In this document: one piece after another, positions 54,036 through 62,285 of the stretch
How the letters are laid out: the number at the start of each line of letters is the position of its first letter
How positions within the stretch are numbered: position 1 is the first letter of the stretch
Assembly: GCA_021613535.1 (NCBI GenBank)
Contig: CP075497.1
Span: forward strand, 9,920,001-9,984,000
Length of the DNA: 64,000 bases
DNA from: Adineta vaga
Lineage: Eukaryota > Animalia > Rotifera
Direction of reading: 5' to 3'
The notes under the pieces: model-generated
Databases searched by the model: none
Told to the model about the DNA's origin: nothing
Seen by the model: the letters and a program-made list of their open reading frames with translations, nothing else
Translations under genes and position numbers: made by a program

Positions 54036-54821
54036 AGTGAAAAAGAGAAGTTATAGAAGAAAATTAAAAATGACAAATAGTTGTACACAAGAAAATAACG
54101 TTACAGATCTTGTATCTGTGAATGACTGTGTATTGGAGTAGGAAGAGTAGGCGAAGAAGAGAACACGTTCTGACGACGATTTATTCTCGATCTGAAAGTA
54201 ACGCGCACATATATATACTTGTTCAGATGTCTGCCGTTCTCTTTCCTATGAAAAGAACGCAAGAGAGAAAGAGAAACGAGAGAAAATGAGAGATACATAG
54301 AAAAAATAGCGTGCCGCTCAAACAATCATTGTCTCACGCTAATGTAATTTCTTTCTCTTCATCGTTCAACACTTTGTCTATCATCATATATTACCTGTAC
54401 GGTTCTTCATATATCATCATCGATAGTTATTCATTAAGTTATGGTCAACTAACAAGTTCTCATCAATTGATTTGTTCTGCATCAAGATTTTATTTTTCTT
54501 CCGAAAAAAAAACATTTCTTTCATAGATTACAATCAAACGAAGAGAGAAAAAGAGAAATGTAGAATAGAGAAGAACGAAAGAAAGGAAGAAAAAAAAACG
54601 AGCGAATATCCGTTTGTCCTCGAAGTACGATGTTAGTCTTAATAAAGAAAATTTAGAGACAGAAGACGAAATCGAATAGACATTCAATTATTAATATGTT
54701 TTTGTTTTTTGAGAACAATTTCTGTTCTATATACATGATAAGCATAAAAATAGTTTAAGAGAATGTGAAAAAGAAAAAAACATGATTGCACGTAAATGGT
54801 AAAAAGAAGTTTTGAAAATGC

Positions 54822-55503
54822 TTAATCGAAAGATATCAATTGTGGTTCAGGTTTTTCTTCATTAATAACAGGATTCGATTGATGCTCATACTCATGCTGA
54901 CGTTGTTGTTGTTGCTGTTGCTGTGGCGGTTGTTGTTGTTGAGTATAAGACATATTCACATTATTAGGAATTGGCATTGAGCCAGGAGGAAGATTGTAAT
55001 TGTTATCTACGATATAAAAATAGAAGCATGAGTCAAACGAAACAATCCTTTTGTCAATAGATAGTTATTTCATTTATGACTGAAATAGCTCTTATAGATA
55101 CGTGTTCGATATTTTTTTCTTGTCATTCGTGATATAAATTTTTTTAAAGATAAAAATGAATACCTCCATTAGCTCCCATAGTATATGGCGTAGGCACATG
55201 AGGTAATAAGTTTGCATCTGTTTTCGGTGGATACATCATCATTGGTGGATAATGAGTTGGAGGTAAAGATGTTTGTGTCGGAAATTGTTGTCCGAATGTA
55301 TATTGATTTGTTGGATCCGCTAATTGTTGTGTTGGTAAAGTAGTATATGGTGGTTGATAGGGAATATTTTGTTGAGGTAATTGACTGTAATCATATGAGA
55401 CCATTGACTATAAGAATAAATAATTAGTTATTTATAATAAATAAATTCTTATGATTAGGACCTTAAGAAAGCAAATGATTAGTGTAAGTAATAGATAAGT
55501 CCG

Positions 55504-55534
<31 letters not shown>

Positions 55535-58313
55535 TACTTCTTTAGTTATGACTTTCGATATTGTTGGTTTTCATTCTATAGCTGATTAGTTTTTTACAGA
55601 AAGTCTGCACTTTATCTATTGATCCGATAGAAAAAGTTATTTTCTTCACTCAAGGAAAAAAGGAGCCAGTGATTTTATTATTCAATGAATAGTGATAATA
55701 TTGTTTTTGTTTGTGAAAGAAAACTTCTTACCAATTGAGGATTTTGTGAAAGTTGTTCACGTGCTAATGTCATTTGTCGTTGTTGTTCGAGACGAGTTTT
55801 CATTTCAATTTCTTGTTGTGCTAAACGTTGAAGATGAATTTGACGTTGATATTCAAGATATTCCTATATGAGAAAGAAAATGATTTGTTTTCTTTTTCTA
55901 AAAATAAACAAGAAAAACAAATCAACAAACTTGTTTCTTTTGTCTCATAAAATCAAGTTTTTGTGCCAATTGAATTTGCCGTTGTCGATCACGTTCTAAA
56001 GCTTCTCGTTGTTTTCTTTCATAATGGTCTGTACGTAAAGCATTTAATGCTTCACGTGCATCTTTTAATTGATTTAGTTTATCTTGTAAATTCTCAAAAT
56101 ATCCTTAAAAAGAACGAAAATAAAACTTCCTTTTTTATTCAAAATTGAAAATGATCTGAAAGAATTTACCTCGTTTATCTTCTAACAATTGCATATAACG
56201 GTGTAATTCAGGATGAAGATGTTGAAGCATAACAAAAACTGATTGAACAGCTGTGTCTGTTGTTACATTTCTACTACGTTGTTGATTACTTAACATTCGA
56301 AATTTAAAATTATTAATATGATCAGTAACAAGCGTAGTAAATTGATCGATTTCACTATCAGTGATGAATTTATTCAATTCATCCTGAAAAAATATCATCA
56401 AACATGTTCGAAATACAGAAAAGAACAGTTCGATTTATTTACCGGTAAAGATGCTGTTAGTTCAATTCCATGCACGTGTCCATGTCCATTAGAAACGTTC
56501 GTCGGAATTGGTTGTTCCTGTTGTTGTTCTCGACGTCCTCGTTCGATATATTTTGTTAATTCCGAATATTCATTACTAGTTTCAGGAGCACTCTAGAGAT
56601 GAATAGATTTTACGGATTTGAATCGATATTGTAATTCAATAAGGAATTGAATAATTACCGAAGTATTATTATTTACTGGAGCTGATAGAAAACTTGACAT
56701 AGCATATTTTTGTGTTAACATTTTCTTCTGTCTTTCTTTTTCTTCTGCTTCACTTTGTGACATCGCTAATGCCAATTGAAAAGATTCTTCTTCATCAATT
56801 TCTGCTTGACTTTTTGTCTAAACATAACACACAATAATGAAATGTTTGCAATTCTATTCTTAAATAATATTTCTCTTACTTGACTTGGCGGCGGAGCAGA
56901 TGATGACATTGTTCTTACTGTTGAAACTGGTTTGACAATTGGATTTGAGCTTAATGGTACTCTAAATTTAATTGGTCTATTGAAAAAAATCAAGTAAATC
57001 TCTTTCATAGTTACCCCGATGTTAATTTTTCATAACATGCATCACAAACACGAACTTCGCGATCGAAACCATATTTTGGAACAGCACATTGTTTTGAAGA
57101 GCCTAGAAAGATTTTTGAGAGATAAATCGTAAACTGTTTACTTATTTTTATTTACATTTATCGCAAAAGATATCGCCACATGCTCGACAATGATGCTATA
57201 AGAAATAATCAAAATGAAACATGAAGAAATGTTCAATAAAAAATTTTACTTTTCGAATAAATGTAGTAAATGTTTGTCGACAACGAAAACATTCTTTATC
57301 ATCTCGCCATTCAGGTGCTATATCACTGTTTTCAAACATAGCTTCACTTTCTTTCAATGGTGGAAAACGATAATTTTCAATTTTCATTAAATTATATGTG
57401 TCAGTAAAAATCTTATGTTGCTGACCTTTGAATAAAAATAAAAACTATGGAATGACCTTTTGTTTTCAAGTGTAAAACATACCAAGACCATGTGACCAAC
57501 ATTGAAGTAATTCGAGAACTTTATCACGAATCACATCTGGACCATTCTTTCAAACAAAACAAAGATAAATGTATTACTTATCTACGTATTTAATTAATAA
57601 TAATAATAATATACTTTTGCTAATTCACGTAATGCATCGACCATATCTCGTTGTGCAAGTTCTTTATGAACTGATCCTCCACAATTTTTAACTATCGATT
57701 CCAAACACTGAAAAAAAAAGCGAAAAAAGATATTCAAGTTCAATTAATCTTATCATTTCATGCTTGAAAGTCTTAATTGTGATGAAGTTATTCTAGACTA
57801 CTGAGAAATAATTGCAACTAGTACAAGATAATGTAAAACACCTGTTGACTGTTATTATATTACTCGAATGATTAGTCACTAAATTCTATCTGATTTCATG
57901 AAAACACAAACTAACATGATACACTATAAATAGACTATAATTAGATTTGTTACAATATTAATTTAACATTTACTGTAATTGATAGATCTATTTTTTTACT
58001 TTCATCAACTGTATATGTGAATGTTTGTGACAGAATGGTTTCGAAGAACTTACCTGAAGTGCACTAAGAATAACATGGGCATTTTCATGGCCAAATTTTT
58101 TCTTAATTGTTTGAATGGCATATTTAGCTCTAGAAATGAAATGTGTATTGTGAAGGAAAATCAAATCGAATATTCTTACGGAACTTCTTGTGATTTAACG
58201 ATATCGCATAATTGAAGAACTGATTCCCAATCAGGTTCAAGTAACAATGGACTTGTTGCTTTATCTAATAATTTATCAAAAATCTTCGTATTTGATAAAC
58301 TAAATAAACTCAT
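54822..58313 (-). CDS. HGS: Hepatocyte growth factor-regulated tyrosine kinase substrate (Hrs, ESCRT-0), multi-exon
   Basis: VHS (FDKLLDKATSPLLLEPDW), FYVE (APEWRDDKECFRC, RKHHCRACG, VRVCDAC), UIM (LALAMSQSEAE), coiled coil, P/Q-rich region and C-terminal clathrin box LISFD*. Confidence 0.96.
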
Positions 58314-58372
58314 GTTAATCTAAAAAGAATAAAAGAAAAAAGTATAATAAACTCAAATGAAATTCCATGAAT

Positions 58373-59353
58373 TTATTCAAATGTTATTCTATCTAATCCA
58401 AGATTTTGTTCATCTCGATATGCCCATGAAAAGCAATAATGTTCAAATAATTGTTCCAATAATTCCTTTTCATCTAGACCTCCATCAATATGTTCAATTC
58501 GTTGTTTTTCATTATGATTTAAATAATTTTTATAATATTCATTCAATGTAATACATTGTGCAGATGTAAAATTAGCATTAATATATCTTTGACATTGACT
58601 AGTTTTGTTTTCACATGAATCCATTCCTACTAAATGACATGAACGTTGTTTTAAATTTTCAATCATAATCTGTCCGAATCGATCATTCATATTGATTTGT
58701 TCGAAATTTACAAATAAACAAGATTGAGCAAATGTTTGTGTTAAATATTTTAATAAATTCGATGAATGTTCAGAAGACATATAGATTAAAACACATTCAC
58801 TAATAAATAATGTTGGTAGTGTAAAATCAAGAATTTGATGTTCAGAAAGATATTTCAATTGATGATCTAATTGAGTTAAATCACGGAGATCAGCGGGTAA
58901 GATTGTATATGAAGATGAATGAAAACCACATGGAATTTTCAATGATTGATTTTCTTGTGGAAATTTCTTTTGAAGAAATGGTAAACGACGAATTTTTGTC
59001 GATTTTATCTCTGTTAATTCTTCAAAATCTACGTCAACAAAATGTTTAAATTTAAGATTTTCATTATCTAATAAATAGAATATTGTTGTATCAAAACCAC
59101 ATCCAAGATTGATAATTTGACATTGATTATTTGTTAATTTAATAAATTTTTCAATAAGATAACGAAGTCCATGTACACGAACATAATAACCAAGACTTAT
59201 TTCTGGTGTTCGACGTTCATGATGTGATGAACCGGTCAATATTTTTAAATATGGATCTTTCCAATATCCACGTTCAATTGCATATAATTTACATTGACAT
59301 GCATCGTTATTTGTTTCGATTATATTACTATTATCAACTGCTGTTATATTCAT
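58373..59353 (-). CDS. LCMT1: Leucine carboxyl methyltransferase 1 (PP2A methyltransferase), intronless CDS
   Basis: TNNDACQCKLYAIERGYWKDPY, RRTPEISLGYYVR, QIINLGCGFDT, PTLFISECVLIYM, LDEKELLEQLFEHYC. Confidence 0.96.
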   Translation of the reverse strand: MNITAVDNSNIIETNNDACQCKLYAIERGYWKDPYLKILTGSSHHERRTPEISLGYYVRVHGLRYLIEKFIKLTNNQCQIINLGCGFDTTIFYLLDNENLKFKHFVDVDFEELTEIKSTKIRRLPFLQKKFPQENQSLKIPCGFHSSSYTILPADLRDLTQLDHQLKYLSEHQILDFTLPTLFISECVLIYMSSEHSSNLLKYLTQTFAQSCLFVNFEQINMNDRFGQIMIENLKQRSCHLVGMDSCENKTSQCQRYINANFTSAQCITLNEYYKNYLNHNEKQRIEHIDGGLDEKELLEQLFEHYCFSWAYRDEQNLGLDRITFE

Positions 59354-61407
59354 ATTACGAAACAGCTAGAAACTTAAGATAAGAAAAAGAAAGTATACTA
59401 CTAATGACGTTAGACGAAATAGATTACTCACATTGTTTAGATTAATATGAGTAATATTGTTACGTTTAAAAAAGTTACTTTTTCGTCCGGTCAAACAGAG
59501 TTATCCGATTCGAACATGTTTCATCTGATGAGATATAGTTAGTGACATCTGTAGATTTTTCTTTGAATACTGAAGACGTACAAAAATGAAAAATTATTTT
59601 ATTTCTTTTTTATTTTAAATAGAAATTTATTGGAATAAATAGATGAGAAAATTTTTTATACATTTTCTTAATTATCCTTCAGATGACGTTGATTTACGTT
59701 GATACAATGCGTGATCGTTGATGGATTATGATTGAAAAACGTATTAATCTGAGAAATATTACATGAGTGAACAGACCAGATTTCTCCCTTTGAAACTTTT
59801 AAAATACATCGTTCTTCTTCAATGAAATAATAATATATCGATTTATAGAAAACAATAAACACGTTATTTTCAACTGAAAAAGAGTTTGTCATTTAATTGA
59901 GATGCACTCGAGTCAAAGTTTATAATACAACATTGAACACTACATCAAAACAATAGAAATAATGATCACTTGAAATAGAAAGACGTTTCCGATTTATTTC
60001 CATATAATGAAAATTATTTCTTCTGATACAATCATTTCTTGTTTCCTTTCAACATCATGGATGAGAGTATAGAGATAAAGGTGTGGGTGAATGTAATTAG
60101 CGAGAAATCCTCAAAATTCTAAGTACGATCATGCATACAATTAGAATATGAAGATTCGTATTCTATTTAACACTATTATTAATCAAAATATATCAGATGA
60201 AATAAAGATTCATCGACGACATTGTTAAATTCCTCATTTTTCTCCTTACTATAGGAAAATATGAGAAAAATTATGCTTGATACTTGATCTCTCGATATTA
60301 CTCGTTTTGACAGATCAAATTTAACTTTTTTTTGTAATTAGAAATACATCATTGCGTAATATAGCATCAAAATATCTGGATCGAATTACTCTAATCATGT
60401 TTCCAAAGAAAGTTGATAGTTTCCTATAATAACATCTAATAGATATCTATGACGTATTAGAATATCACCACCAAACTATTTTGAGAAAAATTTTCATCAT
60501 TCTATTTCGAAGAATATTTATTTGACAAAATCATCAATCTTGAGAAATTTTAATGTTCAGTTAGTTTCATATGTTATAACTTCTGAACAAATTCAATCAT
60601 CGAAATTTAGCATTGACATTTGATACACATAAAAAGAGAATGGTAGGTATTTTAAGAACATCTTTTCATAATCTCAGAATTCATCAAAAGGATTTATGGT
60701 TTCAAAGACATGCATTTCTACGGAAAAAATAGAAGAGTTTGAAATTATTTCTTTTAAAAATTAATAACCCTTTTGAATCTTCGGATATTTTCATCAGATA
60801 AAGTTGTATAGTAGAAAAACAATCAATGCAGCAGCAACTACTACTTAATTATTTTACTCGGCAAGATTCTTTGTTCGAAATTCATTTGAAACATCATATA
60901 ATATTTAATATTGATAATGGGTATGATATCTTTAGAATCGCAACTTCTATTAAAGAAGCCACGGCACAATGTTCTCTTTACATTGATACTTTCTGCGCAA
61001 TTACTTTTGAAAGATTCTTCAGTGTCCTCTCATTTTATTGACGTCATAGAAACATGAGAAGTTCGCTTAGTTTATACTTTCATCTCAAGAGATTTAATTA
61101 TACTCAACAATAAAATACAAGCATCGGTTATACTTCTATCATGTGAATGTCACACAAAAAGAAGAAGTACTTTCACTAAAAGATTTGATTTGTTTTCTTT
61201 TGAATAGTTAAAAAATCTTTTATCACGTATTTGTTTTCATCAAACAAGAGAATACTTGATGGTACCGGAGAGAAGGAATTAATTTGTACCCTCAAATGTA
61301 GTTCTTAGTGAGTTTGTCATTGAGAAAAAAAAAGTGTTTTTTAGGTGAAGGAATTTTATTCTTGGTCTTAACTACATCAAAACGCAATGATGGCGTTGGT
61401 GATGAAA

Positions 61408-61595: not shown

Positions 61596-62285
61596 TTATT
61601 TCTTGCGACGTCGACCATACTTGAAAATGTACGGTACTTGTTGTTCTTCCATAACTTTTTGTAAAAGCATAGTAAGCCAAGCGCGCGCAAATGGATTTGT
61701 TTCAACCAAAACCTTGAGTGAAGGTGACAGACGTGTTGATTCACTCAATTGACTAAGATTGACAACGCTGTTTGGATCAGATGGATCGACTAAAGCTGCT
61801 GCGGCGACAGCTGAATTCAAATTGAAATCTGTCGGTAATGTAGGTGGTGCACTGATTGACGGCGAACTGGCTCGTTTTTGTTGTTTATCTCCTTTAGATT
61901 GTTGATATTTTTGTAATAATAATAAGAACTTTCTAGATAATGATTTTGATGGCAATTGCTGAAGATAAAAATCAAATGGCACATTGGATTCATGTAAAGA
62001 CGAACTTAAAGATGATGATGAATCTTGGTAACGATCTTTCATGGTTGAGAATTCGTTGCTTTCGCCTGTCAACATTTCAGAAGTGTCACCACCTAAATCA
62101 TAATCGATACTCGGGACGGGATGTTGATGTAAGGGCCTGAGTGGTGAAGATAAATCAGCAGATGGATGATTATGGGTAGAATGATGGGTTGAAGATAATT
62201 TTGGGAGACCATGTACTGATGTCGTACATAAAAACAATGTTGAAATAAATGTAACAACGAACACGGCCAGAATATCAAATAACAT
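61596..62285 (-). CDS. Secreted neuropeptide precursor yielding a C-terminal ...PYIFKY-amide
   Basis: Hydrophobic signal peptide (MLFDILAVFVVTFISTLFLCTTSVHG), internal KR site, C-terminal Gly plus basic run (FKY-G-RRRKK*). Confidence 0.8.
   Translation of the reverse strand: MLFDILAVFVVTFISTLFLCTTSVHGLPKLSSTHHSTHNHPSADLSSPLRPLHQHPVPSIDYDLGGDTSEMLTGESNEFSTMKDRYQDSSSSLSSSLHESNVPFDFYLQQLPSKSLSRKFLLLLQKYQQSKGDKQQKRASSPSISAPPTLPTDFNLNSAVAAAALVDPSDPNSVVNLSQLSESTRLSPSLKVLVETNPFARAWLTMLLQKVMEEQQVPYIFKYGRRRKK

What the first reader, a model, noticed from the sequence alone, without database searches (positions are those of the whole stretch)
58313..58377. LCMT1-HGS: candidate animal operon resolved by SL trans-splicing
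Seen: both genes are on the minus strand with only 59 nt between the LCMT1 stop (58373) and the HGS ATG (58313). An AATAAA overlaps the LCMT1 stop. It is followed by a long U-rich tract and an AG (58321-58320) 6 nt before the HGS ATG. The only GT in the gap would give a 33-nt intron, shorter than the others in this window. Known: poly(A) signal, U-rich element and unpaired acceptor is the intercistronic layout of nematode and tunicate operons, and SL trans-splicing has been reported in bdelloid rotifers. Inference: the gap leaves no room for a promoter, so HGS is probably the downstream cistron of a polycistronic pre-mRNA.
Basis: partly seen in the sequence, partly recalled or inferred. Interest (0 to 1): 0.8.

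Follow-up and report, generated by a model that had tools for sequence, protein, structure and literature searches.

The report
Conserved two-gene operon candidate, bdelloid rotifer
In the rotifer Adineta vaga two unrelated housekeeping genes (LCMT1 and HGS/Hrs) lie 59 bases apart; all but one of the bdelloid rotifers sampled keep a 21-63-base gap, and a related species has RNA joining both genes, so they are probably co-transcribed as an operon, which the papers I could search do not report for rotifers.

Summary
LCMT1 is a single exon on the minus strand (59353-58373). It ends 59 nt before the HGS ATG (58313). AATAAA lies over the stop, followed by a 21-nt pyrimidine tract and an AG (58321-58320) 6 nt before the ATG.

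The genome is Adineta vaga and holds at least 42 spliced-leader (SL) RNA gene copies. The same junction occurs in 16 other bdelloid lineages, with gaps of 21-63 nt and an acceptor 3-12 nt before the ATG (33 nt in one lineage). Didymodactylos keeps the gene order but 994 nt apart.

Two assembled contigs from a divergent bdelloid carry LCMT1, a 32-nt gap and HGS with every intron removed. So RNA crossing the boundary exists at the orthologous locus.

A conserved promoter-like module lies upstream of LCMT1. I saw no sign of a conserved promoter inside LCMT1.

Not shown: SL addition at 58319 in A. vaga.

Best reading (about 0.6): a two-gene SL-resolved operon of the tunicate or C. elegans SL1 type. 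The scan has flagged similar candidates elsewhere in this genome. The searchable literature calls rotifer operons unreported.

The parts
59377..59454 (-). Conserved promoter-like module upstream of LCMT1: TTACTCAT (59454-59447), GTGAGTAAT (59431-59423), AACGTCATT (59411-59403), TTCTTATCT (59385-59377)
   Evidence: The same motifs occur in the same order within about 110 nt of the LCMT1 ATG in most of the 14 bdelloid loci compared; L018 and L019 lack the first two, and GC-rich L039 keeps only those two (as TTACTCAT and GTGAGTCAT). Coordinates. The function is inferred.
59366..59372 (-). TTTCTAG, a possible trans-splice acceptor 12 nt before the LCMT1 ATG
   Evidence: Sequence. Most other bdelloids have an AG in a similar place. 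Not tested with RNA.
58373..59353 (-). LCMT1 (leucine carboxyl methyltransferase 1), single exon, 326 codons plus TAA
   Evidence: ORF. Pfam PF04072, E 4e-19. 86% identical to Adineta ricciae LCMT1. Single copy in the genome.
58372..58377 (-). AATAAA poly(A) signal overlapping the LCMT1 stop codon
   Evidence: Sequence. A hexamer lies on or within 12 nt of the stop in 14 of the 16 tight-junction lineages tallied. In GC-rich L039 it is the only AATAAA in 3460 nt.
58314..58372 (-). 59-nt gap between the LCMT1 stop and the HGS ATG
   Evidence: The orthologous gaps are 21-63 nt in 16 other bdelloid lineages and 994 nt in Didymodactylos.
58320..58342 (-). Pyrimidine tract (20 of 21 bases) ending in AG: the candidate SL trans-splice acceptor of HGS
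   Evidence: A Y-rich tract plus YAG followed by AT is conserved 3-12 nt before the ATG in 15 of the 16 other tight-junction lineages (33 nt in the L030 group). SL addition itself was not observed.
58314..58319 (-). 6-nt genome-encoded 5' UTR (ATTAAC) that would follow the spliced leader
   Evidence: The 5' UTR after the AG is 6 nt in 11 of the 16 tight-junction lineages tallied. Inferred.
54822..58313 (-). HGS/Hrs gene (VHS, FYVE, Hrs_helical), many short introns. First coding exon 58313-58179, stop TAA 54824-54822
   Evidence: VHS hit on exon 1. The annotated A. vaga protein P0216 (669 aa) is on the same 13.9-Mb contig. Orthologues downstream of LCMT1 carry VHS+FYVE+Hrs_helical.

Best explanation
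LCMT1 and HGS form a two-gene transcription unit: an operon resolved by spliced-leader trans-splicing.

Proposed mechanism:
1. RNA polymerase II starts at the conserved promoter module just upstream of LCMT1 and transcribes through both genes.
2. LCMT1 mRNA is made by cleavage and polyadenylation, directed by the AATAAA that overlaps its stop codon.
3. HGS mRNA is made when the 23-nt bdelloid spliced leader is trans-spliced to the AG at 58321-58320. This supplies a cap and a usable 5' UTR: the leader plus 6 nt.
4. The poly(A) signal and the acceptor lie only 14-51 nt apart across bdelloids. So the layout resembles the short or absent intercistronic regions of Oikopleura, Ciona and C. elegans SL1-type operons, not the roughly 100-nt SL2-type spacer.

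Shown here:
- the anatomy of the junction;
- its conservation across bdelloids;
- SL RNA genes in the genome;
- RNA crossing the boundary at the orthologous locus of another bdelloid.

Inferred:
- SL addition at this AG in A. vaga;
- use of the LCMT1 promoter for HGS;
- the position of the LCMT1 poly(A) site.
For: 1. Anatomy is confirmed.
2. The genome is a bdelloid, Adineta vaga. It has 42 copies of the published rotifer leader, taken from PMC3795323 Table 1. Each copy is followed by a GTAAAT donor and about 80 conserved nt. The reversed control gave 0.
3. The LCMT1-to-HGS order, with a 21-63-nt gap, holds in A. ricciae, A. steineri, Rotaria magnacalcarata and 13 environmental bdelloid lineages. 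All have a pyrimidine tract plus YAG|AT just before the ATG. Three have no GT in the gap.
4. AATAAA lies on or near the stop in 14 of 16 lineages. In a 53% GC genome it is the only AATAAA in 3.46 kb, although that gene prefers GAG (15) over GAA (9).
5. Contigs L040 (Logan) and L041 (JGI) carry the LCMT1 CDS, a 32-nt gap and an uninterrupted 651-aa HGS ORF. Every other locus, including the related L021, has introns. So these contigs derive from RNA that crosses the boundary.
6. A promoter-like motif module is conserved upstream of LCMT1. Synonymous-site identity along LCMT1 is flat: 0.64 in the last 40 codons against 0.606 +/- 0.044 overall. That gives no sign of a conserved embedded promoter.
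7. Six nt of genome-encoded 5' UTR is too short to work without an added leader. This rests on established knowledge of scanning initiation.
Against:
- No SL sequence was seen joined to HGS anywhere. An SL+HGS junction pattern found nothing in the JGI contigs, and L040 and L041 carry no SL.
- Assemblers merge overlapping RNAs. L040 and L041 prove bridging RNA, not one molecule starting at the LCMT1 promoter. The two contigs may also come from related samples.
- A flat synonymous profile is weak evidence against an internal promoter.
- In Didymodactylos the two genes are 994 nt apart, so tight coupling is not universal.
- The HGS ohnologue on contig C3 works without LCMT1 upstream.
Confidence: 0.6

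Rival explanations
1. The genes overlap but are transcribed independently. HGS has its own promoter inside the LCMT1 coding region. Its primary transcript starts there and is then SL trans-spliced at 58320, with the outron lying inside LCMT1. The two genes are not co-transcribed.
For: - The gap cannot hold a promoter, but the 981-nt CDS upstream could.
- Assembly could merge an LCMT1 mRNA with an overlapping HGS pre-mRNA and give L040 or L041.
- Internal promoters are known in C. elegans 'hybrid' operons (established knowledge).
Against: - No window of raised synonymous conservation in LCMT1: the maximum is 0.707 against a mean of 0.606, and the 3' end is average.
- The only conserved non-coding motif module lies upstream of LCMT1.
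- Keeping the gap at 21-63 nt across lineages is easier to explain if HGS depends on upstream transcription.
Confidence: 0.2
2. LCMT1 is nested in a long first intron of HGS. An HGS non-coding 5' exon lies upstream of LCMT1 and is cis-spliced to the AG at 58320.
For: - The AG is a strong acceptor with no usable donor in the gap.
- L040 and L041 could be intron-retaining isoforms.
Against: - It would need an intron of at least 1.1 kb, whereas the HGS introns in this gene are roughly 50-300 nt.
- Over half of bdelloid mRNAs are reported to carry the SL (PMC1925144), and SL genes are abundant here.
- No candidate upstream exon was seen. This was not searched systematically.
Confidence: 0.07
3. 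A mature dicistronic mRNA with no trans-splicing. HGS is translated from an LCMT1-HGS mRNA by reinitiation or internal entry, as in some insect dicistronic genes.
For: L040 and L041 are fully spliced dicistronic contigs without SL. Their species has no canonical poly(A) hexamer near the LCMT1 stop.
Against: - The conserved pyrimidine tract and AG at a fixed distance from the ATG would have no role.
- Reinitiation after a 326-codon ORF is inefficient (established knowledge).
- AATAAA on the stop is conserved in most lineages.
Confidence: 0.05
4. Chance tight packing of two independent genes in a compact genome, with no functional coupling.
For: The genome is gene-dense and AT-rich, so T-rich tracts and AATAAA are common.
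Against: - The junction is kept in 17 lineages, including a 53% GC genome, with the same elements in the same order.
- RNA bridging the gap exists in a relative.
Confidence: 0.03

Closest known systems
Oikopleura dioica operons (single SL, intercistronic regions of 23-30 nt, as cited in PMC1488885)
   Same: - Same-strand unrelated genes with very short spacers.
- One leader family would serve both monocistronic and operon genes.
- Compact genome with short introns.
   Different: - A different phylum and an unrelated leader sequence.
- The rotifer case lacks direct SL-junction evidence.
- The spacer from hexamer to AG is 14-51 nt and varies between species.
Ciona intestinalis operons without intercistronic DNA (PMC1488885)
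   Same: - Criteria (i) dicistronic cDNA and (iii) minimal intercistronic DNA are matched.
- A single SL.
- In the shortest rotifer junction (15 nt from stop to AG, L038) the branch point must lie inside the upstream cistron. That implies the same either/or processing proposed for Ciona.
   Different: - Ciona upstream cistrons mostly lack AATAAA and abut the acceptor exactly.
- Here AATAAA is conserved and a short U-rich spacer remains in A. vaga.
C. elegans SL1-type operons (cited in PMC1488885 as refs 42 and 43)
   Same: A canonical AATAAA in the upstream cistron, little or no spacer, and resolution by the general leader.
   Different: It is a minority class in a nematode that also has a dedicated SL2. 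No second rotifer leader is known or was looked for here.
C. elegans SL2-type operons
   Same: Polycistronic pre-mRNA, a poly(A) signal, a U-rich stretch, then an acceptor.
   Different: - The spacer is about 100 nt with a defined Ur element and a dedicated SL2.
- The rotifer spacer is much shorter, and only one leader family was found.
Chaetognath operons (PMC12460157)
   Same: - Gnathiferan relatives of rotifers.
- Operons are defined there as same-strand genes less than 250 bp apart with SL evidence.
- Housekeeping genes.
   Different: - Several leaders are used.
- That work has direct genome-wide SL read evidence.
- Neither homology nor independence of the rotifer system has been established.

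Membership tests
SL-resolved eukaryotic operon (criteria as used for Ciona, PMC1488885) | Neighbouring genes on the same strand separated by under about 100 nt | tested here: met
   59 nt from stop to ATG, and 53 nt from stop to the acceptor G.
SL-resolved eukaryotic operon (criteria as used for Ciona, PMC1488885) | The organism has SL RNA genes and SL trans-splicing | tested here: met
   42 genomic copies of the published rotifer leader, each with a GT donor and a conserved snRNA-like body. Control 0. Trans-splicing in bdelloids is reported in the literature (PMC1925144).
SL-resolved eukaryotic operon (criteria as used for Ciona, PMC1488885) | The downstream cistron's mRNA carries the SL at an acceptor at the intercistronic boundary | not testable with these tools
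- The SL+HGS junction pattern gave 0 hits in JGI contigs, which is uninformative.
- Only sequence-level support exists: a conserved acceptor.
SL-resolved eukaryotic operon (criteria as used for Ciona, PMC1488885) | An unresolved dicistronic transcript exists (orthologous locus, any bdelloid) | tested here: met
   L040 and L041 carry LCMT1, a 32-nt gap and an intron-free 651-aa HGS ORF. Caveats: these are assembled contigs, from a related species rather than A. vaga, and the two data sets may be related.
SL-resolved eukaryotic operon (criteria as used for Ciona, PMC1488885) | An unresolved dicistronic transcript in A. vaga itself | not testable with these tools
SL-resolved eukaryotic operon (criteria as used for Ciona, PMC1488885) | The downstream gene lacks its own promoter | tested here: inconclusive
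   - The gap has no room for one (21 nt in L038).
- The synonymous profile of LCMT1 is flat.
- The conserved motif module lies only upstream of LCMT1.
- There are no transcription start data.
SL-resolved eukaryotic operon (criteria as used for Ciona, PMC1488885) | Evolutionary retention of the linkage | tested here: met
   The junction is tight in 17 bdelloid lineages. The order is kept but the spacing is loose (994 nt) in Didymodactylos. In the Brachionus assembly LCMT1 and HGS are on different contigs, of 6 kb and 53 kb. That is indirect evidence.
C. elegans SL2-type operon | An intercistronic region of about 100 nt with a Ur element and a dedicated second leader | tested here: not met
   The spacer from hexamer to AG is 51 nt here and 14-39 nt in other bdelloids. 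Only one leader family was found at up to 1 mismatch. Divergent leaders were not searched for.

The most novel reading that the evidence does not exclude
Bdelloid rotifers have true SL-resolved operons. LCMT1-HGS is one that has stayed intact across almost the whole class. The upstream poly(A) signal sits on the stop codon and the trans-splice acceptor lies as little as 15 nt further on. In the tightest junctions the branch point would then fall inside the upstream coding sequence, so 3' end formation and trans-splicing would compete on each pre-mRNA. That would add a phylum to the animals with operons and give a very compact natural system for studying the choice between polyadenylation and trans-splicing.
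Probability: 0.5. Interest if true: 0.7.

Novelty: new member of a known kind. Interest (0 to 1): 0.62.

Why it matters
SL-resolved operons are documented in nematodes, tunicates, flatworms, chaetognaths and a few other groups. For rotifers a 2008 table lists operons as 'ND' (PMC2481426). [quoted passage not shown]

A deeply conserved rotifer operon with RNA support would matter in three ways:
- It would extend operons to another phylum.
- It would bear on whether trans-splicing and operons arose once or several times within Gnathifera.
- It would affect gene models and promoter assignment in bdelloid genomes, which are widely used to study asexuality, desiccation tolerance and horizontal gene transfer.

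The junction is also unusually compact, which makes it a convenient test case for how polyadenylation and trans-splicing are coupled.

Tried and rejected
So no A. vaga read evidence was obtained.
2. Letters of 59583-59625 were sent to no search tool afterwards. Scripts used only positions up to 59560 and from 59641 on. Locus L001, which genome search created automatically, spans those places and was never used.
3. The look-up of encoding contigs with the window's own LCMT1 found nothing on record.
4. Logan contigs L018-L023 and L039 turned out to be genomic, with introns and long upstream DNA and no SL.
5. The SL 3' end plus HGS start pattern gave 0 hits in JGI metagenome contigs.
6. I looked for an LCMT1 remnant or its promoter module upstream of the HGS ohnologue on C3. 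None was found; only one 7-mer matched.
7. An LCMT1 tree was built to place L040. It was poorly resolved, apart from L040 grouping with L021 and a long Didymodactylos branch.
8. The reading of L040 and L041 as genomic DNA of an intronless HGS was considered and judged unlikely. Every other lineage has introns, including the related L021, which has introns within and after the first coding segment that L040 lacks.
9. The window's HGS exons were not joined into a spliced model. Exon 1 was searched by reference, and full-length searches used database proteins (P0111).
10. Literature searches for rotifer or bdelloid operons found no report. Pouchkina-Stantcheva and Tunnacliffe 2005 is not held.
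Full report
**Observation**

On the minus strand a 326-codon single-exon ORF runs from 59353 to 58376, with stop TAA at 58375-58373. It matches Pfam LCM (PF04072, E 4e-19). It is 86% identical to Adineta ricciae LCMT1 and 41-46% identical to most other animal LCMT1 proteins listed.

- AATAAA occupies 58377-58372, over the stop.
- The next ATG of a recognisable gene is at 58313-58311, which leaves 59 nt between the stop and the ATG.
- That ATG opens a 45-codon exon matching the VHS domain (E 1.5e-7).
- The exon continues through many short introns to a stop at 54824-54822.
- The annotated A. vaga protein P0216 (669 aa, VHS+FYVE+Hrs_helical) sits on the same 13.9-Mb contig as the window's LCMT1.
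- Within the gap the only GT is at 58352-58351.
- A 21-nt tract with 20 pyrimidines ends in AG at 58321-58320, 6 nt before the ATG.

**Organism and splicing machinery**

The assembly has 100.8 Mb in 6 contigs. The closest named proteins are from Adineta, and the HGS hit is labelled Adineta vaga.

I took the published rotifer leader from Table 1 of PMC3795323. It occurs 42 times in the genome at up to 1 mismatch (a T at position 1), against 0 for the reversed control. Each copy inspected is followed directly by a GTAAAT donor and about 80 nt of conserved sequence, and has conserved upstream motifs. Many copies form divergent pairs. These are SL RNA genes. Bdelloid mRNAs are reported to carry this leader on more than half of transcripts (PMC1925144).

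**Comparative evidence**

LCMT1 homologues were used to fetch orthologous loci. HGS follows LCMT1 on the same strand in all of these:

| Source | Locus | Gap, stop to ATG (nt) |
|---|---|---|
| A. ricciae | L012 | 37 |
| A. steineri | L024, L025 | 50 |
| Rotaria magnacalcarata, four assemblies | L013-L016 | 35 |
| Thirteen further environmental or unnamed bdelloid lineages | L019, L021, L026-L040 | 21-63 |

All of these lineages have a pyrimidine-rich tract ending in YAG, followed by AT.

- The acceptor lies 15-53 nt after the stop.
- It lies 3-12 nt before the ATG: 6 nt in 11 of the 16 tight-junction lineages tallied, and 33 nt in one group.
- Three lineages have no GT between the stop and the AG. 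There the AG cannot close an intron that lies inside the gap.
- An AATAAA lies on or within 12 nt of the stop in 14 of the 16 lineages tallied; the two without one are L021 and L040.
- In L039, a 53% GC genome whose LCMT1 prefers GAG (15) over GAA (9), the only AATAAA in the 3460-nt contig lies exactly on the stop.
- Didymodactylos carnosus keeps the gene order but 994 nt apart, with an acceptor-like site 34 nt before the ATG.
- In Brachionus plicatilis the two genes are on different contigs, of 6 kb and 53 kb. That is indirect evidence that they are not adjacent.

**RNA evidence from a relative**

Exon 1 of HGS was searched by reference and gave a full-length bdelloid HGS (P0111). A word search with P0111 then found P0225, a 651-aa HGS known only from a 2965-nt Logan contig.

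- That contig (L040) holds 318 codons of LCMT1 (64% identical to the window's). A 32-nt gap follows, ending in a pyrimidine tract and CAG|ATT. Then comes an uninterrupted 651-codon HGS ORF.
- A JGI contig (L041), 99.7% identical over the overlap, shows the same thing, starting from the last 51 LCMT1 codons.
- Every other locus has HGS introns. This includes L021, which groups with L040 in the LCMT1 tree (98/94 support) and has introns within and after the first coding segment that L040 lacks.

So L040 and L041 derive from spliced RNA that still contains the intercistronic gap and LCMT1. This meets the 'unresolved dicistronic transcript' criterion that the Ciona paper uses for its best-characterised operons (PMC1488885).

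Limits of this evidence:
- These are assemblies, which can merge overlapping RNAs.
- The two data sets may be related.
- The species is not A. vaga.
- Neither contig carries the leader.

That species lacks any canonical poly(A) hexamer near the LCMT1 stop. This may be why the unresolved form is abundant enough there to assemble, but that is an inference.

**Where is the promoter?**

Upstream of LCMT1 a set of motifs is conserved in order and spacing within about 110 nt of the ATG in most of the bdelloid loci compared; GC-rich L039 keeps only the first two (as TTACTCAT and GTGAGTCAT), and L018 and L019 lack them. Window coordinates:

| Motif | Window position |
|---|---|
| TTACTCAT | 59454-59447 |
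| GTGAGTAAT | 59431-59423 |
| AACGTCATT | 59411-59403 |
| TTCTTATCT | 59385-59377 |

Nothing comparable can fit in front of HGS. I tested for a conserved promoter embedded in LCMT1 by measuring synonymous-codon identity in 20-codon windows across 12 lineages. The profile is flat: mean 0.606, sd 0.044, maximum 0.707, and 0.64 for the last 40 codons. This argues weakly against a conserved internal promoter and does not exclude one.

**Mechanism proposed**

Transcription starts at the LCMT1 promoter and runs through both genes. LCMT1 mRNA ends by cleavage and polyadenylation, directed by the hexamer on its stop. HGS mRNA begins where the leader is trans-spliced to the AG at 58320. The HGS 5' UTR would then be the leader plus ATTAAC. 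Six genome-encoded nt alone would be too short for efficient scanning initiation (established knowledge).

The distance from hexamer to acceptor is 51 nt here and 14-39 nt elsewhere. The closest analogues are therefore Oikopleura (23-30 nt spacers), Ciona (no spacer) and C. elegans SL1-type operons (AATAAA present, no spacer). It is unlike the roughly 100-nt SL2-type spacer (PMC1488885). In the tightest junctions (15 nt in L038) the branch point must lie inside the LCMT1 coding sequence, as discussed for Ciona.

**Rivals**

| Rival | Confidence |
|---|---|
| HGS promoter inside the LCMT1 coding region | 0.2 |
| LCMT1 nested in a long first intron of HGS | 0.07 |
| Translated dicistronic mRNA without trans-splicing | 0.05 |
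| Chance adjacency | 0.03 |

The first cannot be separated from the operon model without 5'-end data.

**What could not be done**

The tool says the filter also trips by chance.
- The window's HGS exons were not joined into a spliced model. Full-length searches used database proteins instead.

**Context**

Other readers of this scan flagged similar candidates elsewhere in this genome (s1-482656, s1-489498, s1-498580, s1-502387, s1-498874). One follow-up note says RNA showed the leader on downstream genes of another cluster. I did not check that, and I use it only as a lead that the phenomenon may be general.

In the searchable literature rotifer operons are listed as 'ND' (PMC2481426) or as not reported (PMC7986045). 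A 2025 paper names rotifers only in passing, among lineages with trans-splicing and operonic transcription (PMC12460157).

**Verdict**

The most likely reading is a conserved two-gene SL-resolved operon (confidence 0.6). It would be a new member of a known kind, in a phylum where the papers I could search report no operon.

Noticed in passing
window 59377-59454 (minus strand): A compact motif module is conserved upstream of LCMT1 across bdelloids: TTACTCAT, GTGAGTAAT, AACGTCATT, TTCTTATCT. They resemble bZIP/AP-1-like, CRE-like and GATA-like sites. The last motif may instead be part of a pyrimidine tract before an acceptor (TTTCTAG at 59372-59366).
   Followed up: partly
G000 C5:9.88-9.93 Mb and 10.91-10.93 Mb, C2:8.68-8.69 Mb, C1, C4, C6 (loci L002-L011): At least 42 SL RNA gene copies. 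Many are arranged as divergent head-to-head pairs with the two leaders about 154 bp apart, and they cluster on contigs C5 and C2. All carry T where the published leader has its first G.
   Followed up: partly
G000 C3:6625760-6628534 (L048, L042-L047): An HGS ohnologue (P0227) lies on C3 without any LCMT1. It sits about 1 kb downstream of a paralogue of the window's ORF 61596-62285 (a secreted-looking protein ending ...PYIFKYGRRRK). So the duplicated region lost LCMT1, and HGS-B has an ordinary-sized upstream region with no AG close to its ATG.
   Followed up: partly
L017 1-2320 (Didymodactylos carnosus): A DZIP1-like gene lies upstream of LCMT1 on the opposite strand in Didymodactylos. A first-stage note (s1-498874) places a DZIP1 candidate operon about 17 kb beyond this window's end in A. 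vaga. This hints at longer-range synteny.
   Followed up: no
window 54785-54792 and L041 about 2175-2182: A short CGTGCAAT element lies about 30 nt after the HGS stop in both A. vaga and the divergent bdelloid of L041. It may be a conserved 3' UTR element.
   Followed up: no
window about 55510-55545 (minus strand): A (GAT)n microsatellite lies inside a long HGS intron.
   Followed up: no
Its message says the filter also trips by chance. They lie in the intergenic DNA about 230 nt upstream of LCMT1. I left them out of all later searches.
   Followed up: no
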